Part shown: positions 7,488 to 52,187 of the stretch, piece by piece
How positions within the stretch are numbered: position 1 is the stretch's first letter
How the letters are laid out: the number at the start of each line of letters is the position of its first letter
Virus record (IMG/VR): IMGVR_UViG_3300034358_000008
Span: 186,001-250,000 of that record
Length of the DNA: 64,000 nt
Reading direction: 5' to 3' (one strand)
Program-made: the position numbers and the translations under genes
The notes under the pieces: generated by a model
What the model was told of the DNA's origin: nothing
Seen by the model: only the letters and a program-made list of their open reading frames with translations
The model's database searches: none

Positions 7488-9707
7488 ATGAAAACTTTGA
7501 AATCTCTTCTGAAGGCTAGCGCCACAGATAAACCAGTCTTCTCCATGGAAGCATTCGTAAGCAAGCTGAACCTCGAAAACGATCTGGCCGATGGCGTGTT
7601 TAATACCGCAGCTGGTCTGGCCGCTACCGTAGGTCTGGAAAGCTTTGGTCAAAAGGATGACGCTCAAGCTGCGTCGAACGTATTCAAGACTCTGACTCAG
7701 ATGGCTACCAAGCTGGGCTTTGAGCAGTACATCTCCGAAGACGCTCGCGTTGCAGAGAACCAACTGACTGCTGCTTTCCTGGGTACTATTGCTGCCGCTA
7801 ACCCGGATCAGTACATCAAGGCTCTGCGTGGCCTGTCGAAGGTAATCCCTTCGAACGAAGCTATCAAAACCATCGAACACAAATTCGACGGTCCTGCCGG
7901 TTCCCTGCAAGTATTTGACGCTGAAGGCGCCAAGACCATGGGTCTGGAAAACTACAACGAGAAATCGCAACGTGACTTCCGTGTTGTAACCGTTGGTTAT
8001 AACCTGGCAGCTTCCCGTCAGGATGAGTTCTCCGAGCGCATCTACCCAACTACCGTTATCAACCCTATCGAGGGTGGTGTAGTTCAGGTACTGCCGTACA
8101 TCGCTGTAATGAAAGACGTCCATCACGCTGTTAACGGTGCTCGTTGGAAGAACGAAGAAGTGAACATGGTAGAAGCATACCGTGATCCGTCGATTCTTGA
8201 CGACAACGCTACTGATCTGATCGTTGCGATCGATCCAGCTGGTACCAACCTGGACTTCTTCGTTGACCCGGCTCTGATTCCTGCTGAGACCATTGTTAAC
8301 GAACAAAACCTGTCGATCGAAACCGCTCCTCTGAAGCCTGGTATTCGTATTGACCTGATCGGTAACTCCAACGCTAACCTGCTGATCTCGGCTGGCATGC
8401 TGGAAGTATCTGATACCATCGACCCTGCTGGTCGTCTGAAGAACCTGTACGTTAAGTTCCAAGGTAAAGTTGTTAAGTTCAAAGTTGACCGCATGCCTCG
8501 CGCTGTGTTCCAACCTGACCTGATCGGCGACACCCGTGGCGCACGTATCGACTTCTGGACTGATGATCTGAGCGTAAGTTCGATCACCCGTACTATCGAC
8601 GGCGTACAAACTGCTGCAATGCAAGAACTGACCCAGCGTGAATGGGTACTGCGTCTGAGCGTTGACTTCAGCGGTAACATCAGCACCTCGAAAGGTGACT
8701 CCCGCTTCAACAACGGTACTGCCGAAATCTCGGCTATCCTGAACTCTGACCGTCGTCCAGTAGATATGAAATCTGGCGCTGGTAAAGTTCTGGTTGATTC
8801 GATCACCGATCTGGAAATCGTTGGTTTCGACCTGCTCACTCGGTTCACCAACACTAACCGCCGTCAACGTGGTCACCTGTTGCAAACCCGTGCTCTGCAA
8901 TTCCGTCACCCAATCCCGATGCACGCTCCAGTGACTCTGCCACTGAGCACCATGGAAGATGAAGGTCCAGGCGAAGTTGTTAAAGCACTGACCGTGAACA
9001 CCAACATTCGTAACAGCAACAACGCTGTTAAGACTCTGTTGAACTACCTGGCTCAACTGCGTGAACTGACTGGTAATGGTTTCAACCGTCCAGTTATCAA
9101 CGTGTACGAAGGTGCGCTGGCCGCAGTAATGCGTCCTACCTACCACTTCGAACGCATGCACTTGCCAGACATGATCGATACCCTGAAGTCGAAAGATCGT
9201 TGGGACGACGTTTGCTCCGCTATCCTGAACAAAGTTAAAGGTGCGCTGTTCCCAGCCTACCGTAACTCGAACATCGAAGCTGCTTTCCGAGTGATCTCGG
9301 GCAACCAAGATGAGCGTCCAATGTTCCTGTTCTGCTCGGACAAAGAGATCGCCAACTACCTGATGACCAAAGGTGACGACCGTACCCTGGGTGCTTACCT
9401 CGAGTACGACATCGTATCGACCAACAACGAACTGTTCGACGGTAAGCTGGTAGTAGTACCAACCCGTAAGACCCCAGTAGAGAACGACATCCTGAGCTTC
9501 GGTCAGTTCTTCTACGTGTCGACTATCATCGCCGATCTTCCGATCAGCCGTGGCGGTCACCAGGTCTCCCGTGAGATCGCAGCCATTCCTTTCAACCTGC
9601 ACATCAACAACATTCCATTCGCACTGGAATTTGAAGTAACAGGCTTCCAGGAAGTAATGGGTCACTCGCAGTGGAACAAGCCCGTCGTTGACGGCCTGAA
9701 TGCCTGA
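7488..9707 (+). CDS. Major capsid protein (phiKZ gp120-like)
   Basis: 739 aa; strong codon bias; propeptide with SME/GLE sites; YNLAASRQDEFSERIYPT and NRRQRG motifs recognised from phiKZ-like MCPs. Confidence 0.92.
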   Translation: MKTLKSLLKASATDKPVFSMEAFVSKLNLENDLADGVFNTAAGLAATVGLESFGQKDDAQAASNVFKTLTQMATKLGFEQYISEDARVAENQLTAAFLGTIAAANPDQYIKALRGLSKVIPSNEAIKTIEHKFDGPAGSLQVFDAEGAKTMGLENYNEKSQRDFRVVTVGYNLAASRQDEFSERIYPTTVINPIEGGVVQVLPYIAVMKDVHHAVNGARWKNEEVNMVEAYRDPSILDDNATDLIVAIDPAGTNLDFFVDPALIPAETIVNEQNLSIETAPLKPGIRIDLIGNSNANLLISAGMLEVSDTIDPAGRLKNLYVKFQGKVVKFKVDRMPRAVFQPDLIGDTRGARIDFWTDDLSVSSITRTIDGVQTAAMQELTQREWVLRLSVDFSGNISTSKGDSRFNNGTAEISAILNSDRRPVDMKSGAGKVLVDSITDLEIVGFDLLTRFTNTNRRQRGHLLQTRALQFRHPIPMHAPVTLPLSTMEDEGPGEVVKALTVNTNIRNSNNAVKTLLNYLAQLRELTGNGFNRPVINVYEGALAAVMRPTYHFERMHLPDMIDTLKSKDRWDDVCSAILNKVKGALFPAYRNSNIEAAFRVISGNQDERPMFLFCSDKEIANYLMTKGDDRTLGAYLEYDIVSTNNELFDGKLVVVPTRKTPVENDILSFGQFFYVSTIIADLPISRGGHQVSREIAAIPFNLHINNIPFALEFEVTGFQEVMGHSQWNKPVVDGLNA

Positions 9708-9794: not shown

Positions 9795-9802
9795 CACTAG
9801 GT

Positions 9803-9836
9803 TATAGAGCCCCTACCAATCGGTAGGGGTTTTATG
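9803..9836 (+). terminator. Terminator of MCP transcript
   Basis: GCCCCTACC-AATC-GGTAGGGGT then TTTATG. Confidence 0.8.
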
Positions 9837-9860
9837 ACGTCTTGAGCTTAATAGAATTTA

Positions 9861-9877
9861 TTTCAAGTTTATATCAT
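9861..9877 (+). promoter_or_regulatory. phiKZ-type early (virion RNAP) promoter
   Basis: TTTCAAGTT-TATATCAT, resembling the phiKZ early consensus TATATTAC. Confidence 0.6.
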
Positions 9878-9919
9878 GCTTGGGTAATTACAATTAATGT
9901 TATCTAAAGGATTTATCGA

Positions 9920-15173: not shown

Positions 15174-15176
15174 CTG

Positions 15177-15209
15177 CATAGACGCCCTACCTTCGGGTAG
15201 GGCTTTATG
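15177..15209 (+). terminator. CATA...TATG hairpin terminator
   Basis: GCCCTACC-TTCG-GGTAGGGC. Confidence 0.8.
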
Positions 15210-17305: not shown

Positions 17306-17740
17306 TTAATTCGATTCCTCAAACTGCAAAGTAATCGAACCACCCGGCAAGTAAGCCATGCTAACTGTAGTCACATCAATCTTGAATACCGTACCAGCGA
17401 AAGCTTTATCCAGATACTCAGATTCCTGTAGTGGTAACCCAAGCTTCTCACGCAATACTCTCAATACATCAAAGTATCGACTGTAATCCGTAGGCTTACC
17501 CGGAACCTTTACATCCAGCAGATCAGCTTCAATACGACGACGAATGAAGTAGATAGTTTCTTGACCACCAAAATCATTACTCGACGCAGAACCTTGAATC
17601 TTAACACGGGAGTTACATTCACCTTGTAACCAGATCTCTGGTGTAAGGAAGTCAACGTCCGTCATTTGAATAGGAGGACTGACATGGTTATCGATGTTGA
17701 ATTGATTCAGCAAAGATTGTTTAACGTTAGTTGTAATCAT
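17306..17740 (-). CDS. Putative virion structural protein
   Basis: GAGG RBS; YFIRRRI motif of the Y-x-R-L-D family; in structural operon. Confidence 0.7.
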   Translation of the reverse strand: MITTNVKQSLLNQFNIDNHVSPPIQMTDVDFLTPEIWLQGECNSRVKIQGSASSNDFGGQETIYFIRRRIEADLLDVKVPGKPTDYSRYFDVLRVLREKLGLPLQESEYLDKAFAGTVFKIDVTTVSMAYLPGGSITLQFEESN

Positions 17741-17747
17741 GATGACC

Positions 17748-18620
17748 TCAGTTATAGTGCAACAGCAAATAGCCATCGACGTTAGTACTCAGTTCGCTCA
17801 ACCGCAACACCAATACACGTTGCATATCCTTACGTGGAGAGAACCGTGGCAATACAATGCCATTGTACATCACCTCTAGGTGCCCCTCACCGCTTTTAGC
17901 CTCATAGGCAATGTTCCACTCGGCTTCCGTGATAGAACACACCCACGGACGTTTGGTGACGTCCTGTAGAATAGCTGCCATCTTACGACCGTCAAGCCAC
18001 ACAGAGTCTTTACTCAGGATTTTAATGAAATCACGATGCCCTGTGAAGTCAAAACCAGAAGTCATGTATTGAGCAGCGCGTTTAGTACCAGACGTACCCA
18101 ATGGTGCCGGGTTAGCTTTAGGGAACTCGCGTGCACTACCCAAGTTAGACAGCAGTCGCTTGGAAGTGTTAACCAACTGGAATTGAACAGCACCTACAAA
18201 TCGCATGGACTTAGGGTTAGCTTCCAATTGATAGGTCTGACCGAAAGCATCGTACCGAACATGTAAGAAGTCGTTCAATGTAAAGTTGATGTCGTTCAGT
18301 TCAGAGATAGCATCCAAGATCTTGAAGGAGTCAGCGGGTAGCGTGAAGCCACCCAGCTGCTTAAGCGTAGGACCTTTAAAGAACGTAGCCAAATCCAATC
18401 GATCGTAGAAATACTCAGTACGTTCAATCGGTGGAGCTGTATTCGTTTCGGAATCTACTTGGTTAGGACCGATCACTACTCGGGTACGTGTCCCACCAAG
18501 CGACTCCAGCTCGACAAGCTTCGTGGAGTACGGTTCTAACTCTGTTTGGTAAAGGTCGTTGATACGAGCAATGAGGGCGTCCCACGGGGTAGCCTGCAAG
18601 TAGTCTCTAGTCATTAGCAT
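17748..18620 (-). CDS. Virion structural protein (phiKZ gp127-like)
   Basis: FYDRLDL motif; synteny. Confidence 0.7.
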   Translation of the reverse strand: MLMTRDYLQATPWDALIARINDLYQTELEPYSTKLVELESLGGTRTRVVIGPNQVDSETNTAPPIERTEYFYDRLDLATFFKGPTLKQLGGFTLPADSFKILDAISELNDINFTLNDFLHVRYDAFGQTYQLEANPKSMRFVGAVQFQLVNTSKRLLSNLGSAREFPKANPAPLGTSGTKRAAQYMTSGFDFTGHRDFIKILSKDSVWLDGRKMAAILQDVTKRPWVCSITEAEWNIAYEAKSGEGHLEVMYNGIVLPRFSPRKDMQRVLVLRLSELSTNVDGYLLLHYN

Positions 18621-32840: not shown

Positions 32841-33329
32841 ATGTACAAGCAATATGAAAATATCTCCGAAACAGAACTCGAAGAACTGTTGACACTCAGC
32901 AAGGAAGTTAAGTTCCAGAAGGCTGAAGGTCACCGTCGTCGTGTAGGTGCAAACGGTCCTAATGCCCTTAGTCGTTATAATGTGGCTAAGTGGTTCGATT
33001 GGACTCATGCCCAACGTGAGCTGTACCGTACCAAATTCCCTGACCCTATCCAAAACAAGATTCTACAAGGTTGGTTCCTTGAGATCCCTCGTGGTACAGG
33101 CTTTCTTGATCTGATGACCTACTGGGTAGGTAAACCACTGTCAGGCTCAGTTGTCTGTACAGCGCTACAAAACCAGACCATTTATCTCGATAACAAAGAG
33201 ATCAAAGTTAAGAAGGGTCAACAGATCGGGTTTAACCTTCAGACCTTACATGAACTGAAACCTTCTAAGGAAGGCCAGCTCTGGGCGTGTGTCATGTTTC
33301 TCGGTTGCCCTCTCAAACTAACCGAATGA
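32841..33329 (+). CDS. Hypothetical protein, possible degenerate double-stranded beta-helix
   Basis: KGQQIGF...LHELKP pattern resembles the second half of a DSBH; GAGG RBS. Confidence 0.65.
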   Translation: MYKQYENISETELEELLTLSKEVKFQKAEGHRRRVGANGPNALSRYNVAKWFDWTHAQRELYRTKFPDPIQNKILQGWFLEIPRGTGFLDLMTYWVGKPLSGSVVCTALQNQTIYLDNKEIKVKKGQQIGFNLQTLHELKPSKEGQLWACVMFLGCPLKLTE

Positions 33330-33371
33330 TGCACAATCTTACAATGGTATTTATAAACTTAGAGGTTCATC

Positions 33372-34271
33372 ATGGCTGAAGTTGTCGCAAACCCTATTGA
33401 TCAACAATTGATCAACGTAACCCGTACAGCGTATGCAGCTTATTTGCAAACGACTAAGTATTTGGGTCTTACTCCTTTTCGCGTTATCGCACACACTACC
33501 CTGAACGAGAAGTTCGGTATCGAGAACGGTACTGCCCCTGCTGTTGGGGAAGTGCCTAACGTTCGTTACCTCGTTATTGGTAACATGGGTCACTACACCG
33601 TTAAAGGTCCAGATGGAGCTGACGAAGTAGCTAACCGAATCCACCGTTCTAATGACGCTGCGCTCTACAACCATATCCCGTTCGTAATGCGTGAGGTAAG
33701 TGGTGGTGACCTTCCGGCAGATCGCCGTGATCAATACTGCTTGCGTACACAGGAATCCCATGGCGGTAAGAACTACGTCGTTTACTACGGTCGTCGTATT
33801 AACGTGACTGGTGTTCAACCACAACTGTTGGAACTGGAAGTGATTAACGGTGTTGTAACCGCTAAGCCTTACACCCCAACCGTGGATGACCTCAACCCTA
33901 CTCCACCAGTTATCTCTAACAGCGGTACTGTGATCGGTTCTAATAAGACTGTATCTGCATCGGCAATCGTTAAGGTTAGCCTGTCTGCTGAAGAGATCCG
34001 TGATATCACTGATGCTCACCGTATTCGTACTGGTTCTATCCGTTCCCCGATCATCTCTGAGATGGGTCTGGCTTCGGGCGTAGATCGTCGAGTGACTGCT
34101 CAAGGTCAAGGCTTCCAATACAACGAAGTTATTGCTTGTCAGATCAACGTATTCATTTCTACCAACCACCCGATCGGTTATAACTCCAGTGGTCTGGATC
34201 TTACCTTCGACATCGGTGGCGTAGAACCTACCCTTGGCTCGAACGCTGTTCAACAGGCGCAATTCGTTTAA
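33372..34271 (+). CDS. Virion structural/baseplate protein (phiKZ gp139-like)
   Basis: [17 protein letters not shown] and [12 protein letters not shown] motifs. Confidence 0.75.
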
Positions 34272-34280
34272 GGACTTAAA

Positions 34281-34844
34281 ATGTTAGTGATGTCTAAAAG
34301 CAAAGAGCCTTTTAGAATCGCTGGATTTGACCCAGGTGCAAACTTGGGTCTTTCCCTTATCGAGAATCACTTAGATGGTTCTAAGCCAATTGTGAAGGTA
34401 GTGGAAACAGTCAAGCTGAATCCAGCTGAATTCGGATATAAGGAATTAGCAGAACTCCATGGAAACCGTGCAGTTAAGCTTATGATCCTTCATGACCGTG
34501 TAACCGTATTCCTGCGCACTCATCGTCCACATGGTGTCATCGTGGAGGGTAACTACCTAGGACGCTTCGCAACAGCGTTTGCGAGCCTTGTAGAGTGTGT
34601 AACGGTAATACGTAACGCGTGTTACGCCTATGATCCTTTCATGCAGCTCCATATCGTCGACCCTACTACAGTGAAGACGAATATCGGAATGGTGAAGATC
34701 CGTGGTACAGACAAAGAAGACGTACGCAGAGCCTTAGCAAACTTGAAGGAACTAGAATGGGACGGCATTAACATTGCTGATCTAGACGAGCACTCCATTG
34801 ACTCTATTGCAATCGGCTACTACTACTCCTCGCAACTACTTTAA
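34281..34844 (+). CDS. ruvC: RuvC-like Holliday junction resolvase
   Basis: IAGFDPG, VIVE and EHSIDSIAIG catalytic acidic motifs. Confidence 0.85.
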   Translation: MLVMSKSKEPFRIAGFDPGANLGLSLIENHLDGSKPIVKVVETVKLNPAEFGYKELAELHGNRAVKLMILHDRVTVFLRTHRPHGVIVEGNYLGRFATAFASLVECVTVIRNACYAYDPFMQLHIVDPTTVKTNIGMVKIRGTDKEDVRRALANLKELEWDGINIADLDEHSIDSIAIGYYYSSQLL

Positions 34845-34854
34845 GAGGATGACT

Positions 34855-35292
34855 ATGTTCACCTTATTGAAAAGTGCAAGCACTAAGATATTCGTAATCG
34901 TAATTCTAATACTCGCTGTGGGGAGCTTTGGATTATGGAAGCTGTATACGGGTAACTTGGTAGAGACGGGAAGCCTACAAACTGAGAACGGAACTCTACA
35001 ACAAAATGTGGTCCACACCGAGGAATCGGCAAAGATCGCTGATCGTGTAGTTACCGACTACGCAACCGAAGCCAAGCAGTCTCAACTAGATATAGTCAAC
35101 TTGAGAAAAGAGACAATCAATGAGTACGTTAAGAAAATCGAACCTGTGGTACCTGCTAAGGAAGCAAGCCGTAAAGGTGATGTTCCTGATGGGGCTGATC
35201 GCGTTGGTGTCCTCGCTGACCGCATGTACGAGTACTATTGTCGTGCCCGCCCCGGCGACACACGATGCAGTGCCGTCACTCCTGTTAAGTAA
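34855..35292 (+). CDS. Putative i-spanin (Rz-like)
   Basis: N-terminal TM helix, helical periplasmic region, C-terminal Cys pair; overlapped by a lipoprotein ORF. Confidence 0.65.
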   Translation: MFTLLKSASTKIFVIVILILAVGSFGLWKLYTGNLVETGSLQTENGTLQQNVVHTEESAKIADRVVTDYATEAKQSQLDIVNLRKETINEYVKKIEPVVPAKEASRKGDVPDGADRVGVLADRMYEYYCRARPGDTRCSAVTPVK

Positions 35293-35512
35293 GTGTCAGG
35301 TTGATGCACCGCCTACCAAAGAAGAACTTGTAAATGCTCAAGACGTGTTCCCCACAGCTACGAATGTGTGGGAAGCAAGATTCTTGATTATGTACGACGC
35401 ATACTTAGGTCAGACAGGGAACCTGTTTAACTGTGATCTCCAGGTTGACTCAATTCGTAGTTGGGACACTCAACATCTGGAGATAAAATATGAAGCTCGA
35501 AGAGTTCCTTAG
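35120..35512 (+). CDS. Putative o-spanin (Rz1-like lipoprotein); start may be 35180
   Basis: Lipobox LTA-C after a hydrophobic stretch; Pro- and Cys-containing mature part; overlaps the i-spanin gene in another frame. Confidence 0.65.
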   Translation: MSTLRKSNLWYLLRKQAVKVMFLMGLIALVSSLTACTSTIVVPAPATHDAVPSLLLSKCQVDAPPTKEELVNAQDVFPTATNVWEARFLIMYDAYLGQTGNLFNCDLQVDSIRSWDTQHLEIKYEARRVP

Positions 35513-35885
35513 TGAGCAGGGGACCGATCCGTTGACAGATGAACTCAACGGTCGTCCATTGCGTGCGTTTATCAATGCTAACCTCAAAAGGGTTGGTAGT
35601 GAACCTATCGACGCGGATACAACGTGTGACGTTATCCTTGAACGCATTTACGGCATCGAGGATGTAGATGTACAGAATACTTTGCTTAACCGCACAGTAG
35701 CTAATCTAAAGGGTGATTCGAACTATAAGCGGTTCAGTATGTACGGGGCAATCCTGCTGACAGTAATCGTGATTGGGTTGATCGTCACTGGTGGCCATCT
35801 AAGTCCTGAAGTTATTGATGCATTGAAGTCTATCGCTTTAGGCATTATTAACCTTATCGGTCCAAATACACCGCCTACAACCTAA
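35490..35885 (+). CDS. Membrane protein, holin candidate
   Basis: GGAG RBS; C-terminal hydrophobic helices; lies in the lysis region. Confidence 0.55.
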   Translation: MKLEEFLSEQGTDPLTDELNGRPLRAFINANLKRVGSEPIDADTTCDVILERIYGIEDVDVQNTLLNRTVANLKGDSNYKRFSMYGAILLTVIVIGLIVTGGHLSPEVIDALKSIALGIINLIGPNTPPTT

Positions 35886-35887
35886 CT

Positions 35888-35918
35888 ATAGCCTCCCCTT
35901 TCTAGGGGAGGTTTTATA
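35888..35918 (+). terminator. Hairpin terminator
   Basis: GCCTCCCCT-TTCT-AGGGGAGGT then TTT. Confidence 0.7.
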
Positions 35919-35968
35919 ATGCTATGTAAGTTAAGTAGATCTTTCACACGTTTTAAAGAGGGTTTAAC

Positions 35969-36508
35969 ATGAGTGATCGTTTTCCCTACAACATGTTTTC
36001 GCGAGAAGCACTTGTAGAGCTGGTCCGGCGATCCGAGCACCGACCTGATCTGAAGGATGAATACATTACCTTTGAGGATTTGTTCTTCTCCCCATCGGTG
36101 GTTGAACCGGGGCGCACTTATGTCGAGATGGTCGATCGCGTAACGAGTCATAAAGACTGGTTCGAGTTCAGACGACTGGACTTTGCAGACCGTCGGTGTC
36201 TGGGGCCTTCGATTAGTATCAAGGTCATGGGTGATCCGACCCCCGCTAGCATTGCGGCTGAAATCAACCGCTCTCGGCTAATGAAATTAGGTCCTAGTGA
36301 TGTATCTTTCTCCGAAGAAGTGATCCCAGTAATTGGCACCACTTTTGAATATGAATTCACAGCGCTGACCGGTAGTTACGTTTACTACGGTAAGACTACG
36401 ATCCAAGTAGAGGTTATCCCAGTCTCTCAATGGACACGTTATCTCGAATCCGGGACAATTCGTTACACAGAAGAAGGTGTTACACGCGATCTAGAACATC
36501 GAGTGTAA
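35969..36508 (+). CDS. Putative virion protein with C-terminal R-Y-x-E-x-G tag
   Basis: FEFRRLDF family motif; C-terminus RYLESGTIRYTEEGVTRDLEHRV. Confidence 0.75.
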   Translation: MSDRFPYNMFSREALVELVRRSEHRPDLKDEYITFEDLFFSPSVVEPGRTYVEMVDRVTSHKDWFEFRRLDFADRRCLGPSISIKVMGDPTPASIAAEINRSRLMKLGPSDVSFSEEVIPVIGTTFEYEFTALTGSYVYYGKTTIQVEVIPVSQWTRYLESGTIRYTEEGVTRDLEHRV

Positions 36509-36523
36509 TACACTGGAGTTAAT

Positions 36524-37318
36524 ATGGCTTTGTTAAAGAATGGTTCCCGTGGGGAACAGGTTGCTGCACTACAGCGTCAACTGAAGAGTCTTGGTTACGT
36601 TCTCAAAGATGACGGTGTCTTTGGTGACACTACCGAGAGTTACGTAAAAGAAGTTCAGCGTAAATTCAAACTCAAGGATGATGGGATTGTAGGCGACAAA
36701 ACCTGGGCTGTTATCAACACCCCTAACACTACTCTGAAGTCTCTAACTGAAGAGGACTTTAAATGGGCAGCAGACTTCCTTGCGGATGACGTGCCATCAG
36801 TTAAAGCTGTACGTGAAGTAGAAGCACCTCAAGGTGGCTTCCTTCCAGATGGACGTGTAACCATTCTCTATGAACGTCATGTGATGTATCGTCAGCTTTT
36901 CGCCAACGGTATTGATCCAGACCCTATCTCAGCTAAGTTCCCTGACATCGTTAATAAGAAGACGGGCGGTTATCTGGGTAAGGCGGCTGAATACACGCGC
37001 TTGGATAAAGCCAAGCAGATTGATGATAAGTCTGCATTAGAGTCCTGCTCTTGGGGCGCATACCAGATAATGGGTTACCATTGGAAACTACTGGGGTTCA
37101 AGGACGTTTACGAACTCATCGCTAAGATGGAGTCTTCGGAACGCGGTCAACTGGAATGCTTCGTGCGCTTCATTAAGGCCAACCCTGTATTGCTGAAAGC
37201 TATCCGTCAGGATGATTGGGTTACTTTCGCCCGCTATTACAACGGCTCGAATTATCGTGCTAATAAGTACGACGAAAAGCTTGAAGCTGCATTTAAGCAA
37301 AACGGCGGCTTGAAATAA
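36524..37318 (+). CDS. Modular endolysin: peptidoglycan-binding domain + N-acetylmuramidase (DUF3380-type)
   Basis: LKNGSRG..V..LQ..L / DGVFG / DGIVG; VE..GGFLPDGR..ILYERH; SWGAYQIMGYH; FARYYNG. Confidence 0.9.
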   Translation: MALLKNGSRGEQVAALQRQLKSLGYVLKDDGVFGDTTESYVKEVQRKFKLKDDGIVGDKTWAVINTPNTTLKSLTEEDFKWAADFLADDVPSVKAVREVEAPQGGFLPDGRVTILYERHVMYRQLFANGIDPDPISAKFPDIVNKKTGGYLGKAAEYTRLDKAKQIDDKSALESCSWGAYQIMGYHWKLLGFKDVYELIAKMESSERGQLECFVRFIKANPVLLKAIRQDDWVTFARYYNGSNYRANKYDEKLEAAFKQNGGLK

Positions 37319-37390
37319 TACCCAACAGTATGTGTCTTATTTTACTAAGGCGAAATTGGGTGGTTAATCTATTTTTTAAAGGAAATCACA

Positions 37391-40300
37391 ATGGCTGATC
37401 CAAAAAAAGCTGGTATGATCTCGGGCATGTCGCCCCTTGCAATCATCACTGGTGATGAGCTGATGGAAGTCTCCTCGCGTCAAAGCGATGGGACTTGGAA
37501 AACGTTTTCCATTCTGATCAACAAGATCCGTACCAACCAAGGTCTCTCTGCCTATGAAGTAGCTGTGAAGAACGGTTACCAAGGCACAGAAGTCGAGTGG
37601 TTGGATACGCTGAATGGTAAGTCGGCATATGAACTTGCCGTAGAGCTAGGCTTTACCGGCACTGAAGCACAATGGCTGAAGACCCTCGTCGGTGAATCCG
37701 CTTACGATGAAGCTGTAGATCAAGGCTTCCCCGGTACCGAAGCTGAATGGCTGGCGTCTCTAGTTGGTAAGTCCGCCTTTGAAATTGCTAAGGCTAACGG
37801 CTTCGTGGGCACACAAGTTGAATGGCTTGCAAGTCTGAAAGGCCACTCGGCTTATCAGATCGCCAAAGAAATTGATCCAACTGTAGGTACTGAGGCTGAA
37901 TGGCTCCAGACTTTGGTTGGTGCTTCTGCTTACCAAACAGCTGTGGATAAAGGTTTCGTTGGTACAGAAGCTGCTTGGTTGGATTCCCTCAAAGGTAAGT
38001 CCGCTTATCAGATCTGGGTTGCCTCGGGTAACAGTGGTACTGAAGCTGACTTCATCGCTTCGCTGAAAGGTGAAGACGGTACCGACGGTGATGATGGCGA
38101 ATCTGCTTATGCGCTGTGGGAAGCTATCCCGGCTAACGCAGGTAAAACAGAAGCCGAGTTCCTCGATTCCCTTAAAGGGAAGGATGGTACTAATGGCACC
38201 AACGGTAACGACGGTGAGTCGGCCTATGAGGTCTGGGAATCTCTTCCTGGGAACGCAGGTAAGACCGAAGTTGACTTCATCGTTAGTCTGAAAGGCCAAG
38301 ATGGTACCAACGGTACCGATGGCACAAACGGAACAGATGGTGAATCCGCTTACGAAGTTTGGGAAGGTCTTCCAGGCAATACTGGTAAAACACCACAAGA
38401 GTTTATTAACTCTCTGCGTGGCACCAATGGTACTAACGGTACCAATGGCGCAACCGGTAAGTCTGCTTATGAAGTGTGGCTCCTGCAAGCTGGTAATGCC
38501 GGTAAGACAGAAGCTGAGTTCATTGCCAGCTTGAAAGGTACAGACGGCACTAACGGAACCAATGGTACTAATGGTGCAGCTGGTAAATCGGCTTACGAGA
38601 TTTGGGTAGCACTACCAGCTAACGCCGGTAAGACCGAACAACAGTTCTTGGATAGCCTTGTTGGTAAATCTGCTTACGCTGAATGGTTGGCACTGGGTAA
38701 CACCGGTGATACCTCTGCATTCTTGCTGTCTCTGAAAGGTGACCGCGGGGCGCAAGGCGACTCGGCTTATCAAGTATGGTTGGCGGCTGGTAATACTGGT
38801 TCGCAAGCTGTTTACTTGGCATCCCTCAAAGGTAGTGATGGTGAGAATGGTACTGACGGCACCGATGGTGCTGCTGGTAAACCAATCACTGTGTTGGACG
38901 AATTGACCCAAGCTGAATTCGATCAGATCGTATCGGAAGGTACTTCTGCAACCGCTGATGCTTACTGGGTAGGTGACTTCATCTACGTTTACAACGGTAC
39001 TGACTGGGTTCAATCCCCGAACGTTCGTGGTAAAGATGGTAAAGGTCTGAACTATCTGGGTGAATGGCCAGGTAACCTCTCGCTGCCTTTGGGTAGCAAC
39101 TACGTAGCTGGCGACACTTACGTTTGGGGTCAAGACAACCTGAACAAATCCCTGTGGACTTTGGTTGAAGAACCGACTCGCGCTTGGGTTGATATCGGTG
39201 TTCCAGGTCCTAAGGGTGATTCCGCTTACCAAACTTGGTTGGGTCTGCCTGGCAATGCCGGTAAAACACAGCAAGAATTTATCGACTCTATCAAGGGCGA
39301 TAAAGGTGATGATGGTGACATCGGTCCTATTGGTAAGTCGGCATACGTGTTGGCTCAAGAGGAAGGCTTCGTAGGTACTGTTGAAGAGTACGTCGAATCC
39401 CTGCATGGTCAATCTGCTTATCAGACTTGGGAAGAACAAGCTGGTAACGCTGGTAAAACCGAAGCGGAATTCATCGCTAGCCTGAAAGGCGCTAAAGGTG
39501 ATGCCGCTGCTGCATTTGAGATCATCGATCAGCTGACCAACATCTCTCAGTTGCCACGTCCGGGTGATGCTACTCGTGCTTACTACGTTAACAAAGATCT
39601 CTACGTTTGGTTCACTGCTAAAGACGACTATGAGAACCTCGGTTCTCTGGACGGCGCTTCGGCATACCAAGTTTGGCTGGATCTGGGTAACACTGGTACT
39701 GCACAAGACTTCATCAATAGCCTGAAGGGCACTAACGGTACCAATGGTACTAACGGCGCATCTGCCTACGATACTTACAAAGCCCTTCCGGGTAATGCAA
39801 GTAAGACTGAGGCTGAATTCATCGCCTCTCTCAAAGGTACTGATGGGACAAACGGTACCAATGGTACTAACGGTAAGTCTGCTTACGAGCTGGCTGTAGC
39901 TGGTGGTTACGTTGGGACTGAAGCTGCTTGGATTGCTTCGCTCAAAGGTAAGAACCTGCAAGTGAATGGTACTCAGGCTAACGCTGCTGCTATTCAAGCA
40001 CTACCTACCCCTGCTAACCAAGATGCTTGGGTTGCTAACGATACCGGTAACCTGTGGATCTATGCTACCTCTGCTTGGATCGATGCTGGTCTTTTCCGTG
40101 GTGCTAAAGGTACAGACGGTACTAATGGCCAATCGGCCTATGAACTCTACAAAGCTCAACCGGGTAACTCTGGTAAGACTGAAGCTGAGTTCTTGGCTTC
40201 GCTGAAGGGCACCAATGGTACTAACGGTACCAATGGCACGAACGTAAAAGTTCTGGGCTCTAAGGCTAACCTTGCTGCTATCCAAGCTTTGCCAACTCCT

Positions 40301-41746
40301 GCACAACAGGATGCTTGGACTGCTCTGGATACACTGCACCTGTACATGTACATCGGTGCTGCTTGGGTGGACCTCGGTTCGTTCAAAGGTGACAAGGGCG
40401 ATCAAGGTATCCAAGGTCCTGCTGGTCAAGGTATCAACATCGTAAGTACAGTCACTCTGTTGGCTGACCGTCCACTGGCTTCTACCCTGAATCCAGGTGA
40501 TGCTGTTTACGTTGAAGCTACTGGTTCCCTGTACCAAGTGAACGATGCACACGTCTATGGCGTAGGTATTCCGATCCGTGGTCTGAAAGGCGACAAAGGT
40601 GATCAGGGTAACCAAGGTGTGATGGGTCCTGGTATTACCATCCAAGGTTCCTACGCTACCGCTGCTGCTCTGATTGCAGCGCATCCTACCGGTTCTCCGG
40701 GTGAAGCTTACACTGTTGGTTCTAACCTGTACCTGTACGGTGTTAACCCTGTTGGCGGCGCTACTGAGTGGTATAATGCCGGTCAGTTCAAAGGTGACAA
40801 GGGTGATAAAGGCGACATTGGTAACCGTGGTCTTCCGGGTGATAAAGGCGTTAAGGGTGATCGCGGTTCGCTGTGGCTCAACCTTGGCTCTACTGCTGCT
40901 CCGACTCCGACTTACGGTACCGTAGGCGATTGGGCTATCACCACTGACTTCATTACTTACTACAAGGATGAAGGCGCTGGTTGGGTTCGTATTGGTCCAA
41001 TGGTTCCAGGTGGTATCTCCTCGCCTGCAATCGGTCTCGGTAAAGTTGTCCGTGAGGGCGACAACTGGGTAGCATTGCCAGTGGACGAAGTTACTTCTCC
41101 AGTACTCGACACACAGTACGTCCGTAAGGGTATTGCTGGTGGTAAGACTGTCTGGGCTGTACTGAGCGTTCCTGCTGCTGGTATCCCAGAAGTACCGGGC
41201 TCCACTGTTATCCCACAAGGTCGTACTTCGGCTGGCTGGGTATCGGTAATTGCTCTGCCGACTGGTCAAACAGCTGGTAAGCAATACGTTTGGAAAGATG
41301 GTGCTTTCGCCCTGTCTCCAATCCAAGTAGCTGCTGCTCCGGGTACAGTTGGTAAGGTATACGGTTACAGTGTCGATGGTAGTGGTGTTGGTTCGTGGGC
41401 AGACATGACCCTCGACTCCTACAACCTGCTGGCTGACGCCGCTCCACGTACCACCAGTTTCACTGTGAACCCAGCTACCCAGAACTGCTACTCTGTTTCT
41501 GGTACTACCGCTGGTATCGTAGTGACCTTGCCTAAGTTGGCTACCGGTCGTTCGATGATGTGTGTATTTACCGTAGTGGGTGCAACTAACAAGTTGACCT
41601 TCGCTGCTGGTACTGGTGCACCTACCGTCGCATACAACGGTAACACTGCTGCTGTTGACATTGAATACGGTGCTTCTTCGACCGTGCTCACTGCCTTCTA
41701 CAATGGTATCAACACTTGGATCATCTCCAAGGGTCCTGCTTACTAA
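37391..41746 (+). CDS. Long collagen-like fibre protein (phiKZ gp145/146 position)
   Basis: About 21 SA(Y/F) repeat units, G-X-Y collagen tracts, and globular spacer and C-terminal domains. Confidence 0.85.
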   Translation: MADPKKAGMISGMSPLAIITGDELMEVSSRQSDGTWKTFSILINKIRTNQGLSAYEVAVKNGYQGTEVEWLDTLNGKSAYELAVELGFTGTEAQWLKTLVGESAYDEAVDQGFPGTEAEWLASLVGKSAFEIAKANGFVGTQVEWLASLKGHSAYQIAKEIDPTVGTEAEWLQTLVGASAYQTAVDKGFVGTEAAWLDSLKGKSAYQIWVASGNSGTEADFIASLKGEDGTDGDDGESAYALWEAIPANAGKTEAEFLDSLKGKDGTNGTNGNDGESAYEVWESLPGNAGKTEVDFIVSLKGQDGTNGTDGTNGTDGESAYEVWEGLPGNTGKTPQEFINSLRGTNGTNGTNGATGKSAYEVWLLQAGNAGKTEAEFIASLKGTDGTNGTNGTNGAAGKSAYEIWVALPANAGKTEQQFLDSLVGKSAYAEWLALGNTGDTSAFLLSLKGDRGAQGDSAYQVWLAAGNTGSQAVYLASLKGSDGENGTDGTDGAAGKPITVLDELTQAEFDQIVSEGTSATADAYWVGDFIYVYNGTDWVQSPNVRGKDGKGLNYLGEWPGNLSLPLGSNYVAGDTYVWGQDNLNKSLWTLVEEPTRAWVDIGVPGPKGDSAYQTWLGLPGNAGKTQQEFIDSIKGDKGDDGDIGPIGKSAYVLAQEEGFVGTVEEYVESLHGQSAYQTWEEQAGNAGKTEAEFIASLKGAKGDAAAAFEIIDQLTNISQLPRPGDATRAYYVNKDLYVWFTAKDDYENLGSLDGASAYQVWLDLGNTGTAQDFINSLKGTNGTNGTNGASAYDTYKALPGNASKTEAEFIASLKGTDGTNGTNGTNGKSAYELAVAGGYVGTEAAWIASLKGKNLQVNGTQANAAAIQALPTPANQDAWVANDTGNLWIYATSAWIDAGLFRGAKGTDGTNGQSAYELYKAQPGNSGKTEAEFLASLKGTNGTNGTNGTNVKVLGSKANLAAIQALPTPAQQDAWTALDTLHLYMYIGAAWVDLGSFKGDKGDQGIQGPAGQGINIVSTVTLLADRPLASTLNPGDAVYVEATGSLYQVNDAHVYGVGIPIRGLKGDKGDQGNQGVMGPGITIQGSYATAAALIAAHPTGSPGEAYTVGSNLYLYGVNPVGGATEWYNAGQFKGDKGDKGDIGNRGLPGDKGVKGDRGSLWLNLGSTAAPTPTYGTVGDWAITTDFITYYKDEGAGWVRIGPMVPGGISSPAIGLGKVVREGDNWVALPVDEVTSPVLDTQYVRKGIAGGKTVWAVLSVPAAGIPEVPGSTVIPQGRTSAGWVSVIALPTGQTAGKQYVWKDGAFALSPIQVAAAPGTVGKVYGYSVDGSGVGSWADMTLDSYNLLADAAPRTTSFTVNPATQNCYSVSGTTAGIVVTLPKLATGRSMMCVFTVVGATNKLTFAAGTGAPTVAYNGNTAAVDIEYGASSTVLTAFYNGINTWIISKGPAY
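37541..40240 (+). repeat. Coding tandem repeats G-x-SAY...G.E..(W/F)..SL.G with GTN tracts
   Basis: Visible in both translation and DNA (ggtactaacggtaccaat units). Confidence 0.85.
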
Positions 41747-41755
41747 CTGAAGCGT

Positions 41756-41790
41756 CATAAAGCCCCTCCTTTAACGGGAGGGGTCTTATG
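41756..41790. terminator. CATA...TATG hairpin between convergent genes
   Basis: GCCCCTCC/GGAGGGGT stem. Confidence 0.75.
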
Positions 41791-41793
41791 TCG

Positions 41794-42576
41794 TTAATCG
41801 CTTAACTCTTGTGCAATCCGTTCTTCATCAGTTAACCACTTCTCTTCACGAGTACCGCCGTGAACGTTAAGAATACTGAAGTACTTTGCATCAATGAACT
41901 CGAAGTCCATGTGAATCAGCTTCTCTCTGCGGAAAGCATTCAGCACTTGCTTCTTAGCATCAATAGACATCTCACTAACGTCAGCTTCAAAGATCTTAGG
42001 AGCAATGAAGTTGAAACAGTTAATACGAATTTTACCAAGCTCAATCGCGTGAGTCTTGATCCATTCAGGGAACTCGTACATAATGGCAGCAGCAAAGTTC
42101 TCATTCAAGAACTGTGGCGTAACTTCAATCATTGGTACACTGATCAATTCGATCACTGTAGATTGACCGTAGAGTTCATGCATGATGTCACGAAGCCATT
42201 CGATCATGTTAGAATCAAAGTCGTATGGCCAGTAGTTAATGGTTAGACCAACCTGATCATCAGCATCACCCATCTGATTCATTCGGTTGATATGGTCATC
42301 AGCTAATAGACGAATAATGAATGGTGTGATACCCGAGCGTACGGAAGCAGCAATAGTCGCCATGGTGTTCTCGCCACCACGTTGAGCATAGGCTTCAGCA
42401 AACATTTCATTACTAATCAAACCACCAGTCATTCGATCCCAGAAATCGTTCTCACGAGTCCAGTAGTGATCGCCACTCACAAGCACTCTGGCAGCGTCTT
42501 GGTTCAATCTTGCAATGGTACCAAGGCGAGTGTCTAAATGAGCGTCTAGGGGTGTTAGGATTCGTTTAAGGCCCAT
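41794..42576 (-). CDS. Conserved phiKZ-like hypothetical protein
   Basis: LDAHLDTRLGT N-terminal motif; TAATG coupling. Confidence 0.75.
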   Translation of the reverse strand: MGLKRILTPLDAHLDTRLGTIARLNQDAARVLVSGDHYWTRENDFWDRMTGGLISNEMFAEAYAQRGGENTMATIAASVRSGITPFIIRLLADDHINRMNQMGDADDQVGLTINYWPYDFDSNMIEWLRDIMHELYGQSTVIELISVPMIEVTPQFLNENFAAAIMYEFPEWIKTHAIELGKIRINCFNFIAPKIFEADVSEMSIDAKKQVLNAFRREKLIHMDFEFIDAKYFSILNVHGGTREEKWLTDEERIAQELSD

Positions 42577-43048: not shown

Positions 43049-43723
43049 TTACACCAAGTTGTTATTCAAATGTTGAGCCTTCAGATATACCGAAAGAGTC
43101 TTGTTAGACTTAACGGTAGAATCAAACTCAGTCATGATAGAGTTAGTGGATGCTTCACCTGTTTCCAGAATGGAGCGATTCATTGCAAGGTATGCCTCTT
43201 CATCACCACCACGACATTTGATCAACTCACGGATCATATCGAACAAACCTTTCGAGGCGTTAACCTGAAGCTCAGGAGCCGACAGACGAGCACCTTTAGA
43301 GTCACCGGTAGGTTGGCCTGTACGTTGGTCGATAATGTGGTTAGACGAAGGGATAGAAGCCTTCTTGACCAGCATCTGTACTTGACGACGGAAAGGAACG
43401 ATACCTACAAGGTGTTTGTTAGCTGTCCGATACGTTTGACCTGTTTGTGGGTCAGTCAAAATTACATGCTGAAACAAATCGTACTCGAGTTCATCAGCGA
43501 TCTCATAGTTACGATTCATGTTAAGAGTGTACTCTTGCAAGTTAGGTGCATAGAGAGCCATGATCTCTGCGTCAGTTTCTAATGCAACAATCCACTCTTC
43601 AAATTCTTTGTCGTTCATACCAGCGAACATGTCAATATAGACTTGATCGTTTGCAGAACCGGGAAGGAATTTACTAATGAAATAGATGGCTTCCTTCTCA
43701 GCCGCTTTTCTGTCGTTAGCCAT
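43049..43723 (-). CDS. Virion RNA polymerase beta subunit, C-terminal part (phiKZ gp149-like)
   Basis: RRQVQMLVKK; TGQPTGDSKGARLSAPE (rpoB QP..G...GG.R.GEME equivalent); RGGD. Confidence 0.85.
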   Translation of the reverse strand: MANDRKAAEKEAIYFISKFLPGSANDQVYIDMFAGMNDKEFEEWIVALETDAEIMALYAPNLQEYTLNMNRNYEIADELEYDLFQHVILTDPQTGQTYRTANKHLVGIVPFRRQVQMLVKKASIPSSNHIIDQRTGQPTGDSKGARLSAPELQVNASKGLFDMIRELIKCRGGDEEAYLAMNRSILETGEASTNSIMTEFDSTVKSNKTLSVYLKAQHLNNNLV

Positions 43724-51710: not shown

Positions 51711-52187
51711 ATGCTATACACAGATATCGATTATTTAGCCATGACATACGGCGCAGATAAATGGCAGTTGGTATTAGACCGCATCAATATCAATCATCCA
51801 ACTCTTCAGTTCACCAAAGCTAACTGTAAACTGTTAAAGAGTATGCCTTACGGTGATACAGCTAAACCTCTGTTGGGGTACTTGCAGATCCAAAAGGGTG
51901 AGGCCACTTACGAGTTCCTCTATGGTCGACACAACATCAGTGACGTTGCTTCGGGTAAGCCTGTACTGACTACTGCTGATAAGACGGCATTAAAGGCTAT
52001 GAATACCTCTGAAGCCATGTTGGATTACATTGCCAAGAAATGGAACGTAGCTTTTACCTCTGATGATTTCTGGGTGAGTCCTAACTCCAAGGATTACACC
52101 GGTGGTACTACGCAACCTAATTGGTTGATGAAATCACAATACAGTGCCTTGGGTTGGTGGGGCGAGATGATCGTGCATTTACACTGA
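51711..52187 (+). CDS. Putative virion protein
   Basis: Likely ATG 51711 after the terminator; FLYGRHNI family-like motif. Confidence 0.7.
   Translation: MLYTDIDYLAMTYGADKWQLVLDRININHPTLQFTKANCKLLKSMPYGDTAKPLLGYLQIQKGEATYEFLYGRHNISDVASGKPVLTTADKTALKAMNTSEAMLDYIAKKWNVAFTSDDFWVSPNSKDYTGGTTQPNWLMKSQYSALGWWGEMIVHLH

What the first reader, a model, noticed from the sequence alone, without database searches (positions are those of the whole stretch)
36437..37560. Possible shared peptide-tag docking system linking capsid, adaptor protein and collagen-like fibre
Seen: the R-Y-x-E-x-G tandem tag ends protein 35969..36508 (36437-36508) and also ends the MCP readthrough product. Two genes downstream, the 1451-aa fibre begins with a short distinct domain (MISGMSPLAIITGDELMEVSSRQSDGTWKT) before its repeats. 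From recall, IS.L......G.E...V.Q.G.T-type N-termini and xxTE.G repeats co-occur in many phage fibre proteins; this is unverified here. Inference: the fibre's N-terminal domain binds the tag, so the same fibre could be mounted at two virion sites. Readthrough efficiency would then set how many fibres decorate the head.
Basis: inference. Interest (0 to 1): 0.78.

Follow-up and report, generated by a model that had tools for sequence, protein, structure and literature searches.

The report
Capsid readthrough tail shares docking tag

Summary
The tandem R-[YF]-x-E-x-G tag occurs at only two places in all six frames of the 325-kb genome. One ends the 179-aa protein (36434-36505). The other lies in frame after the TGA of the major capsid gene (9708-9791).

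Both copies are conserved in eight relatives from six genera. The TGA is always kept, and the extension shows many synonymous changes.

The 179-aa protein is the phiKZ gp143 homologue: a DUF7941 N-terminal domain with the tag where DUF7941 proteins carry their docking linker.

The fibre-docking idea has only weak support:
- One ESMFold2 run set gave scores of 0.00, 0.81 and 0.54, against 0.00 for all controls.
- Co-occurrence holds only within one clade.
- In phiKZ the fibres look essential but gp143 does not.

Comparative data favour a different partner. In Goslar and Burkholderia phage FLC9 the capsid gene also ends in TGA followed by an in-frame tail. Those tails, and the constitutive capsid C-termini of three other chimalliviruses, carry the DUF7941 linker core. 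In Goslar the tail matches that of gp23, the gp143 counterpart.

Most likely the readthrough capsid isoform anchors DUF7941 proteins on the head. Translation of the extension and the identity of the partner are both inferred, not shown.

The parts
7488..9707 (+). Major capsid protein gene (phiKZ gp120 / 201phi2-1 gp200 homologue), 739 aa, ending in TGA
   Evidence: PF25620 PhiKZ_MCP, E 1.5e-218; 85.6% DNA identity over the 3' part (query 8800-9900) to the 201phi2-1 major head gene
9705..9707 (+). Candidate leaky UGA stop codon of the capsid gene
   Evidence: TGA at this position in the window and in all 8 relatives examined, across six genera. In this sample, distant chimallivirus capsid genes without an extension tail end in TAA
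9708..9794 (+). In-frame 28-codon extension plus its own TGA; residues 7-28 (9726-9791) are the tag
   Evidence: The frame stays open for 26-30 codons in 9 of 9 phages. Across all pairs there are 283 identical codons, 267 synonymous-difference codons and 404 non-synonymous ones, and third positions vary most. No in-frame ATG/GTG/TTG start codon, so it is not an independent gene
9808..9834 (+). Intrinsic terminator hairpin plus T run, downstream of the extension
   Evidence: Sequence; the hairpin is conserved, with both-sides compensatory changes in the 9-phage alignment
35969..36508 (+). 179-aa virion protein, homologue of phiKZ gp143 / 201phi2-1 gp228: DUF7941-type N-terminal domain (about residues 1-150) plus the tag
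   Evidence: tblastn finds 69 Pseudomonas phage records. The 201phi2-1 annotation says 'identified as virion protein by mass spectrometry'. Relatives hit PF25613 DUF7941 positions 3-152. The AF2 model (pLDDT 82.6) matches PDB 9xqd_0 = PHIKZ127 at E 4.2e-7
36434..36505 (+). C-terminal tag: three 8-residue units with R157/E160, R165/E168/G170 and R173/E176
   Evidence: In the 41-sequence family alignment the three arginines are invariant and the three glutamates are at least 90% conserved; G170 is invariant only in the 9-phage alignment. Model pLDDT is 61-66, with short beta bridges every 8 residues
36524..37318 (+). Endolysin (PG_binding_1 plus N-acetylmuramidase); context gene between the tag protein and the fibre
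   Evidence: PF11860 at 6e-62 and PF01471 at 2.1e-16
37391..41746 (+). 1451-aa collagen-like fibre (201phi2-1 gp230 / phiKZ gp145-gp146 type)
   Evidence: PF01391 Collagen; synteny and annotation in relatives
37391..37543 (+).
   Evidence: Conserved in every relative, and carried by two different fibre proteins in several phages. Present once in this genome. ESMFold2 contact residues 7-11, 13, 26, 28, 35-38
17748..18620 (-). Orthologue of phiKZ gp127 (full DUF7941 protein of the outer baseplate); candidate acceptor domain
   Evidence: PF25613 at 79.4 bits; E 5.1e-55 to PDB 9xqd_0 PHIKZ127
17306..17776 (-). 156-aa ORF just downstream of the gp127 orthologue, in the position of phiKZ gp126 (a DUF7941 N-domain-only protein without a tail); candidate acceptor. 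Assigned by gene position only
   Evidence: Translation. The homologous positions in phiKZ and 201phi2-1 hit PF25613 positions 4-152. This ORF itself did not hit PF25613 at E <= 1 in the own-genome search
51711..52187 (+). Further weak DUF7941 N-domain paralogue without a tail; candidate acceptor
   Evidence: PF25613 at 17.3 bits, below the cut-off; translation

Best explanation
The tag is this clade's version of the chimallivirus DUF7941 'tail': a short donor peptide that plugs into an acceptor domain on another protein.

The 179-aa gp143-type protein carries both halves. It has a DUF7941 N-terminal acceptor-type domain followed by the donor tag.

The capsid gene ends in a leaky UGA. A few per cent of ribosomes read through it (inferred) and add the same donor tag to the capsid protein's C-terminal arm. 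In phiKZ that arm sits at the centre of each capsomer. A minority of capsomers would therefore display a docking site.

The most likely occupant is a DUF7941 N-domain: gp143's own, or that of the gp126/gp127-type proteins. The readthrough isoform would then seed short, non-essential chains or decorations of gp143 on the head. Readthrough frequency would set how many.

Shown here: the tags, their conservation, the fold of the N-domain, and the parallel arrangement in other chimalliviruses.

Inferred: translation of the extension, its exposure on the capsid, and the identity of the acceptor.
For: - Tag uniqueness and conservation.
- gp143 family equals a DUF7941 N-domain: relatives match PF25613 positions 3-152 of 276. 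The AF2 model matches the solved phiKZ gp127 chain 9xqd_0 at E 4.2e-7, TM 0.69. The tag starts where DUF7941 proteins have their linker.
- Published work on Goslar (PMC13742148): AlphaFold predicts that the DUF7941 linker docks on another protomer's N-domain as an added beta strand. Purified gp22 forms filaments. gp23 (N-domain plus linker only) is present at about 2140 copies per virion.
- Independent parallel in Goslar: the capsid gene ends in TGA, and its in-frame 28-codon tail shares D-N-V-A-D-G-F with the gp23 tail. The back-translated pattern hits only those two sites in 237 kb, with different synonymous codons. gp23 lies next to a lysozyme-like gene, as gp143 lies next to the endolysin.
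- More capsid tails with the linker core: Burkholderia phage FLC9 also has TGA plus a tail with L-D-G-F-K-V-Y-P. LucasX, Proteus phage 10 and Ea35-70 carry the same core constitutively at the capsid C-terminus. DUF7941 linkers in those genomes have the same core.
- Capsid C-terminal arm position in phiKZ: six-helix bundle at the hexamer centre, touching the outer protein gp244 at pentons (PMC11297242).
- Head association: SPN3US 'paralog family B', found in tailless-mutant heads (PMC5694885), is DUF7941.
- gp143 is non-essential in phiKZ, as decoration proteins usually are.
Against: - The only direct in-silico test was of the rival and it gave a weak positive.
- The R/E-rich triple repeat is chemically unlike the hydrophobic L-x-G-[LF] linker core of other DUF7941 proteins. 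The acceptor may therefore have changed in this clade.
- The window protein itself does not reach the PF25613 threshold.
- In the monomer model the tag is only moderately confident (pLDDT 61-66) and was not shown to be docked on its own N-domain.
- No peptide evidence exists for the readthrough product.
- The two tags of one phage are not more alike than tags of different phages (p = 0.46).
- phiKZ gp143 has an experimentally supported role as a holin regulator (PMC12894885). That role needs no tag.
Confidence: 0.42

Rival explanations
1. The trimeric N-terminal domain of the collagen-like fibre (gp145/gp230 type) binds the tag, with one 8-residue unit per fibre subunit. The fibre would then be mounted both on gp143 (an adaptor held in the virion by its DUF7941 domain) and on readthrough capsid subunits.
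For: - ESMFold2 complex: scores 0.00, 0.81 and 0.54 against 0.00 in three controls. Two runs share 77% of their contacts. The tag (153-179) touches the same residues on all three fibre copies, including the invariant G8, I10, S11 and E26.
- Three repeats in the tag match a three-fold fibre.
- The fibre gene lies two genes downstream in every relative, including divergent metagenomic contigs.
- The N-domain is shared by two different fibre proteins in several phages, as anchor domains are.
- The triple-repeat form of the tag exists only in the clade that has this N-domain.
- gp145/gp146 are not mentioned anywhere in the text of the phiKZ structural atlas.
Against: - The tool itself rates the result 'weak support', and one run scored zero.
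- Co-occurrence is clade-level only.
- The N-domain profile finds no such domain outside this clade's fibres. None is found in Goslar, FLC9, LucasX or Proteus phage 10, which still pair a capsid tail with DUF7941 tails.
- phiKZ gp145/gp146 appear essential while gp143 is dispensable. The essential mounting of the fibre does not depend on gp143.
Confidence: 0.25
2. The tag binds the capsid itself. The gp143 tail would occupy a site at or near the capsomer centre, and the readthrough extension would be the same peptide supplied in cis. Readthrough would then tune how much gp143 can decorate the head, or replace it, rather than recruit it.
For: - The tag is shared between a capsid isoform and a virion protein.
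- The capsid C-terminal arms form a pore-lined six-helix bundle at the hexamer centres.
- Goslar gp23 copy number (about 2140) is close to the capsid protein copy number (1615).
Against: The text searches of the phiKZ capsid and Goslar papers turned up no outer density assigned to gp143 or gp23. A tail bound at high occupancy should be visible. No test was run here.
Confidence: 0.1
3. The extension is not translated to any useful level. Its conservation would reflect an RNA element (a structure upstream of the terminator), and the gp143 tag would serve only gp143's role in lysis timing.
For: - Invariant GGG/CCC and CCG/CGG segments could pair across the extension. They persist where the encoded residues differ.
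- gp143 regulates the holin in phiKZ.
Against: - Peptide-level conservation with 267 synonymous-difference codons.
- The encoded peptide matches a protein tag elsewhere in the same genome, in nine phages.
- Goslar and FLC9 show the same logic with unrelated sequences, and other lineages fuse the tail directly to the capsid protein.
- The proposed RNA pairs show no covariation.
Confidence: 0.06

Closest known systems
Q-beta A1 (readthrough) protein: UGA readthrough of the coat gene gives a minor, extended capsid subunit (own knowledge)
   Same: A leaky UGA at the end of the major capsid gene, an in-frame extension, and a minor isoform built into the shell.
   Different: Q-beta is an RNA phage, and its extension is a roughly 200-residue folded domain needed for infection. 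Here a dsDNA jumbo phage adds about 28 residues that copy the tail of another virion protein. Readthrough is inferred here, not shown.
T7/T3 capsid protein 10B: a minor capsid isoform made by a -1 frameshift at the end of gene 10 (own knowledge)
   Same: Recoding at the 3' end of a dsDNA phage capsid gene gives a sub-stoichiometric C-terminal extension on the capsid exterior.
   Different: That case uses a frameshift rather than readthrough. 10B is dispensable and has no known partner. Here the extension matches a second protein's tail.
DUF7941 head-to-tail filaments of phage Goslar (gp22/gp23; PMC13742148)
   Same: gp143-type proteins share the DUF7941 N-domain fold. The tag sits where the docking linker sits. 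Goslar's own capsid gene has a TGA-plus-tail arrangement matching the gp23 tail.
   Different: That paper anchors the filaments at the peripheral baseplate. Searches of its text for readthrough, read-through and stop codon found nothing, and no capsid tail is described in the passages read. The tag here is an R/E-rich triple repeat, not the L-x-G-[LF] core.
phiKZ gp143 as holin-specific lysis regulator (PMC12894885)
   Same: The 179-aa protein is its homologue (about 48% identity) and sits in the same spanin-holin-gp143-endolysin cassette.
   Different: In that work the first globular domain binds the holin N-terminus. The passages read do not mention the C-terminal tag, and that role does not explain its copy after the capsid gene.
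Conserved N-terminal anchor domains of multi-fibre or tailspike phages such as CBA120 or G7C (own knowledge)
   Same: Different fibres of one phage share a short conserved N-terminal domain. That fits a common mounting site.
   Different: Those systems dock folded domains onto adaptor proteins at the baseplate. A peptide tag duplicated on the capsid has not been described there.

Membership tests
DUF7941 (PF25613) module, for the 179-aa protein | Match to the Pfam profile above the gathering score (27 bits) | tested here: inconclusive
   The window protein has no PF25613 hit at E <= 10 and is not found by the genome scan. Close relatives score 27.5, 22.9 and 16.2 bits over profile positions 3-152. 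phiKZ and 201phi2-1 gp143-type loci score 16.6 and 14.2 bits.
DUF7941 (PF25613) module, for the 179-aa protein | N-terminal globular domain with the fold of a solved DUF7941 protein | tested here: met
   The AF2 model (41-sequence alignment, pLDDT 82.6) has one significant PDB match: 9xqd_0 at E 4.2e-7, probability 1.00, TM 0.69 by target. That chain is PHIKZ127.
DUF7941 (PF25613) module, for the 179-aa protein | A flexible segment after the N-domain that docks on another protomer's N-domain (head-to-tail) | not testable with these tools
   The tag occupies this position.
Programmed stop-codon readthrough giving a minor capsid isoform (Q-beta A1 type) | A conserved leaky stop followed by an in-frame extension under protein-level selection | tested here: met
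   TGA in 9 of 9 clade members. The frame stays open for 26-30 codons with the motif conserved. There are 267 synonymous against 404 non-synonymous codon differences, and third positions vary most.
Programmed stop-codon readthrough giving a minor capsid isoform (Q-beta A1 type) | The extended protein is detected in particles | not testable with these tools
   No proteomic data can be searched here. Text searches of the papers read for readthrough, read-through or stop codon returned only transcriptional readthrough, and the phiKZ capsid and atlas passages read show no capsid extension.
Collagen-like phage fibre (201phi2-1 gp230 / phiKZ gp145-146 type), for ORF 37391..41746 | Collagen G-x-y repeats plus the conserved N-terminal domain and S-A-Y-E repeats of this family | tested here: met
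   PF01391 at 6e-12. The N-terminal 56-64 residues are 81-84% identical to 201phi2-1 gp230, by tblastn and MAFFT.
   ipSAE 0.00, 0.81 and 0.54 (median 0.54) against a best control of 0.00. The tool's verdict is weak support.
   Both are confined to one Pseudomonas phage clade. Chimalliviruses with other capsid and DUF7941 tails lack the domain (with the own genome as positive control).

The most novel reading that the evidence does not exclude
Across Chimalliviridae the C-terminal tail of the major capsid protein mimics the DUF7941 docking linker. In some lineages the tail is made constitutively. In others (the phiKZ clade, Goslar, FLC9) it is made only by UGA readthrough. The very abundant but unplaced DUF7941 proteins (Goslar gp23/gp22, SPN3US paralog family B, phiKZ gp143) would then be anchored on the head at capsomer centres. 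Stop-codon leakiness would act as the dial that sets the density of this coat.
Probability: 0.35. Interest if true: 0.82.

Novelty: new variant of a known kind. Interest (0 to 1): 0.72.

Why it matters
phiKZ-like phages are the model for nucleus-forming jumbo phages and are candidates for therapy. Recent near-complete virion structures of phiKZ and Goslar leave hundreds to thousands of DUF7941 protein copies, and the collagen-like fibres, without a place.

A conserved readthrough isoform of the capsid protein carrying the same tail as a DUF7941 protein would add recoding to capsid assembly in dsDNA jumbo phages. It would also give a concrete, testable anchor point on the head for these unplaced proteins. 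And it would offer a natural short tag for displaying cargo on jumbo phage heads at a tunable density.

The question becomes directly testable in three ways: re-searching existing mass-spectrometry data, peptide binding assays, and stop-codon mutants.

Tried and rejected
- **Wider co-occurrence of the fibre N-domain and tag.** A profile of the N-domain against 1.84 billion representatives gave 74 hits. Every single-stretch N-terminal hit whose sequence I read was a clade fibre. The multi-stretch hits I read were cadherin-like or similar repeat proteins sharing a generic beta-hairpin pattern.
- **Co-evolution of the two tags within a phage.** Same-phage pairs are no more similar than permuted pairs (p = 0.46). 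This is uninformative.
- **Homology between the fibre N-domain and the gp143 beta-hairpin (residues 40-70).** hhalign picks that alignment but at probability 0.4%, E 0.16. Rejected as evidence.
- **Suppressor tRNA.** The genome has tRNA-Trp(CCA), Asn and Tyr, but no opal suppressor. As I recall it, phiKZ has no tRNA-Trp, so a phage tRNA is not required.
- **RNA structure behind the UGA.** The consensus fold pairs invariant segments only, with no covariation. Left open.
- **Wider survey of capsid gene ends.** The diverse alignment had no block conserved enough to scan with. The Goslar protein alone retrieved only near-identical contigs.
- **Capsid-tail motif statistic.** The regular expression for the L-x-G-[LF]-x(1-3)-P core was written after seeing the tails. 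The binomial P of 1.6e-12 is therefore inflated and is given only as a description.


Full report
**What the window is.** The window is bases 186001-250000 of a 324,912-bp phage genome. Its DNA is 75-76% identical, over the aligned stretches of the 33000-42000 region, to Pseudomonas phages 201phi2-1 and Viktualia, and more distantly related to PhiPA3 and PS119XW. It is therefore a phiKZ-like, nucleus-forming jumbo phage (Chimalliviridae). ORF 7488..9707 is the major capsid protein (PF25620, E 1.5e-218). ORF 36524..37318 is an endolysin. ORF 37391..41746 is a 1451-aa collagen-like protein.

The 179-aa ORF 35969..36508 ends with three 8-residue units of the form x-R-[YD]-x-E-x-[GR]-x (36434-36505). 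The capsid gene ends in TGA (9705-9707). It continues in frame for 28 codons that contain the same kind of units and end R-R-L-E-R, followed by a second TGA and a terminator hairpin. In a six-frame scan of the whole genome the tandem motif occurs at these two places only. Four of the five single units in the genome lie inside them.

**Both tags are conserved.**
- I read the end of the capsid gene in Viktualia, 201phi2-1, Phabio, PhiPA3, PS119XW, Psa21, RVTF4 and the phiKZ isolate KTN4. These represent six named genera.
- All eight end in TGA. All continue in frame for 26-30 codons of the form x-G-K-G-x-x-R-Y-x-E-[DN]-G-x-x-R-Y-x-E-D-G-x-A-R-R-L-E.
- Across all pairs there are 283 identical codons, 267 codons that differ but keep the residue, and 404 that change it. 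Third positions differ most. That is the signature of a translated peptide.
- There is no ATG, GTG or TTG codon in the extension's frame, so it cannot be a separate gene. The conserved terminator, with compensatory changes, lies after it.
- The tag on the 179-aa protein is present in the same eight phages. It is recognisable in 53 of 54 database homologues; the exception is a possibly truncated sequence from a 503-bp contig. A strict pattern for the full motif matches 36 of the 54. In the 41-sequence family alignment R157, R165 and R173 are invariant, and E160, E168 and E176 are at least 90% conserved.
- Translation of the extension is still an inference. None of the papers I read reports it.

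**Who the proteins are.**
- *The 179-aa protein* is the homologue of phiKZ gp143 and 201phi2-1 gp228. The latter is annotated as found in virions by mass spectrometry.
  - In phiKZ, gp143 sits in the spanin-holin-gp143-endolysin cassette. It speeds holin triggering through the holin's N-terminal domain (PMC12894885). It tolerates transposon insertions.
  - The Goslar structure paper lists gp143 among DUF7941 proteins.
  - Here, relatives match PF25613 positions 3-152 of 276, at or just under threshold. An AlphaFold2 model built on 41 sequences (pLDDT 82.6) has a single significant PDB match, chain 9xqd_0 (E 4.2e-7). That chain is phiKZ gp127, a DUF7941 protein of the outer baseplate.
  - So the protein is a DUF7941 N-terminal domain followed directly by the tag. 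The tag has pLDDT 61-66 and short beta bridges every eight residues.
- *The fibre* is the 201phi2-1 gp230 / phiKZ gp145-gp146 type. Its first 51 residues are conserved in all relatives. In PhiPA3, PS119XW, Psa21, RVTF4 and two metagenomic contigs, two different fibre proteins carry this domain. That is what an anchor domain looks like.

- I spent the one available complex prediction on three copies of fibre residues 1-102 (21-row alignment) plus residues 146-179 of the 179-aa protein.
- Scores were 0.00, 0.81 and 0.54 (median 0.54) against 0.00 for three controls. The tool's verdict is 'weak support'. By its own calibration, a pass at 0.60 or under is more often wrong than right unless the guess was already likely.
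- In the best run, residues 153-179 touch the same residues (7-11, 13, 26, 28, 35-38) on all three fibre copies. Those residues include several invariant positions. This fits the attractive idea of one repeat per subunit.
- Against it, four points.
  - Co-occurrence is not independent. The tag, the gp143 family and the N-domain are all limited to one Pseudomonas phage clade.
  - The N-domain profile searched against 1.84 billion proteins found no such domain outside this clade's fibres.
  - The two tags of one phage do not track each other.
  - In phiKZ the fibres gp145/gp146 lack insertions, while gp143 is dispensable. gp143 is therefore not the essential mount.

**What comparative genomics suggests instead.**
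- DUF7941 proteins have an N-terminal domain, a flexible linker and often a C-terminal domain. For Goslar, AlphaFold predicts that the linker of one protomer adds a strand to the N-domain of the next. Purified gp22 forms filaments. gp23 (N-domain plus linker only) is the most abundant unplaced virion protein, at about 2140 copies against 1615 capsid subunits (PMC13742148).
- The Goslar capsid gene also ends in TGA, and its in-frame 28-codon tail shares D-N-V-A-D-G-F with the gp23 tail. The back-translated pattern hits only these two sites in the 237-kb genome, with different synonymous codons. gp23 lies beside a lysozyme-like gene, as gp143 lies beside the endolysin.
- Burkholderia phage FLC9 has TGA followed by a tail containing L-D-G-F-K-V-Y-P.
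- Xanthomonas phage LucasX, Proteus phage 10 and Erwinia phage Ea35-70 carry L-D-G-L-K-Y-P, L-D-G-L-K-Q-P and L-G-G-L-N-T-T-P at the constitutive capsid C-terminus.
- The same L-x-G-[LF]-x(1-3)-P core ends or follows the N-domain in DUF7941 proteins of those genomes. It is very rare in background sequence: 6 hits in 156,011 residues. The pattern was defined after the fact, so that figure is descriptive only.
- None of Goslar, FLC9, LucasX or Proteus phage 10 has the fibre N-domain (positive control).
- Seven other distant capsid genes end in TAA with no such tail.
- SPN3US 'paralog family B', detected in tailless-mutant heads (PMC5694885), is the DUF7941 family.

**Most likely mechanism.**
- *Shown:* two donors with the same tag, one on a DUF7941 N-domain protein and one encoded after a conserved UGA of the capsid gene. 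The same pairing occurs with unrelated tail sequences in two other lineages, and fused versions occur in three more.
- *From published structures:* the phiKZ capsid C-terminal arms form a six-helix bundle at the hexamer centre. At pentons they reach the outer protein gp244 (PMC11297242). An extension would therefore emerge at capsomer centres.
- *Inferred:* near-cognate decoding of UGA gives a minor extended isoform. Its tag is bound by the same acceptor that binds the gp143 tail. That acceptor is a DUF7941 N-domain, so gp143, alone or in short chains, decorates the head.
- I put this at about 0.42, the fibre N-domain as acceptor at about 0.25, binding to the capsid itself at about 0.1, and no meaningful translation at about 0.06. 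The rest is unassigned.
- The chemistry of the tag is the main reason for caution. It is R/E-rich, has three units with D-G or N-G turns, and is probably a small beta meander. That differs from the ancestral hydrophobic core, so the acceptor may have changed in this clade.

**Comparison with known systems.**
- The recoding resembles the Q-beta A1 protein (UGA readthrough of the coat gene) and T7 10B (a frameshift at the end of the capsid gene).
- The docking logic resembles DUF7941 head-to-tail assembly.
- I found no description of a capsid readthrough tail in chimalliviruses, or of its identity with a DUF7941 tail, in the library searched.
- I rate it a new variant of known kinds.

**Limits.**
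- There is no protein-level evidence for readthrough.
- Only one complex prediction was possible, and it used my own alignment.
- The sample of distant capsid gene ends is small (12 genomes).
- The assignment of the window protein to DUF7941 rests on fold and on relatives rather than on its own profile score.

Noticed in passing
genome outside the window: G000:C1 41555-41630, 42200-42275 and 42718-42802 (minus strand): The phage encodes tRNA-Trp(CCA), tRNA-Asn(GTT) and tRNA-Tyr(GTA). tRNA-Trp is the usual near-cognate reader of UGA, so a phage copy could raise readthrough of the capsid stop.
   Followed up: partly
window 9715-9780 (within the extension): In the nine-phage DNA alignment, GGG (starting 8 nt after the UGA) and a downstream CCC are invariant, as are CCG and CGG. 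They stay invariant where the encoded residues differ, and they can pair. This may be an RNA stem around the tag-coding region. It has no covariation, so it is untested.
   Followed up: partly
L017:1577-1666 (Goslar MK327938.1, complement of 43352-43441) and L040:1489-2031 (gp23): The Goslar capsid gene ends in TGA with a 28-codon in-frame tail sharing D-N-V-A-D-G-F with the tail of the abundant DUF7941 protein gp23. Searches of the Goslar structure paper for readthrough, read-through or stop codon found nothing.
   Followed up: yes
L048 (Burkholderia phage FLC9), L046 (LucasX), L047 (Proteus phage 10), L019 (Ea35-70): ends of the capsid genes: FLC9 has TGA plus an 18-codon tail with L-D-G-F-K-V-Y-P. 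LucasX, Proteus phage 10 and Ea35-70 carry the same DUF7941-linker-like core before a TAA stop.
   Followed up: partly
L080 (SPN3US JN641803.1 115000-135000): DUF7941 profile hits fall on SPN3US_0138-0145, 0148, 0151, 0154 and 0155. The 'paralog family B' of head proteins seen in tailless mutants is therefore the DUF7941 family. This fits poorly with a purely baseplate location for these proteins.
   Followed up: partly
window 34798-35885: The genes upstream of the 179-aa protein keep the order of the phiKZ lysis cassette: the spanin pair 34798..35292 and an overlapping ORF 35120..35512, then a 131-aa protein 35490..35885 in the holin position. Assigned by synteny with annotated relatives only.
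   Followed up: no
window 37391-41746: The fibre alternates about 25-residue S-A-Y-E...G-T-E-x-E-W-L repeats, G-T-N/G-T-D collagen-like runs, and several roughly 50-residue inserts. Those inserts loosely resemble the N-terminal domain's hairpin pattern. This resemblance was seen by eye and not tested.
   Followed up: no
window 33351-34262 (-), 13620-15179 (-), 40001-41758 (-) and others: Long antisense ORFs almost co-extensive with real genes appear in the mechanical ORF list. No homology evidence was sought. They look like by-products of codon bias.
   Followed up: no
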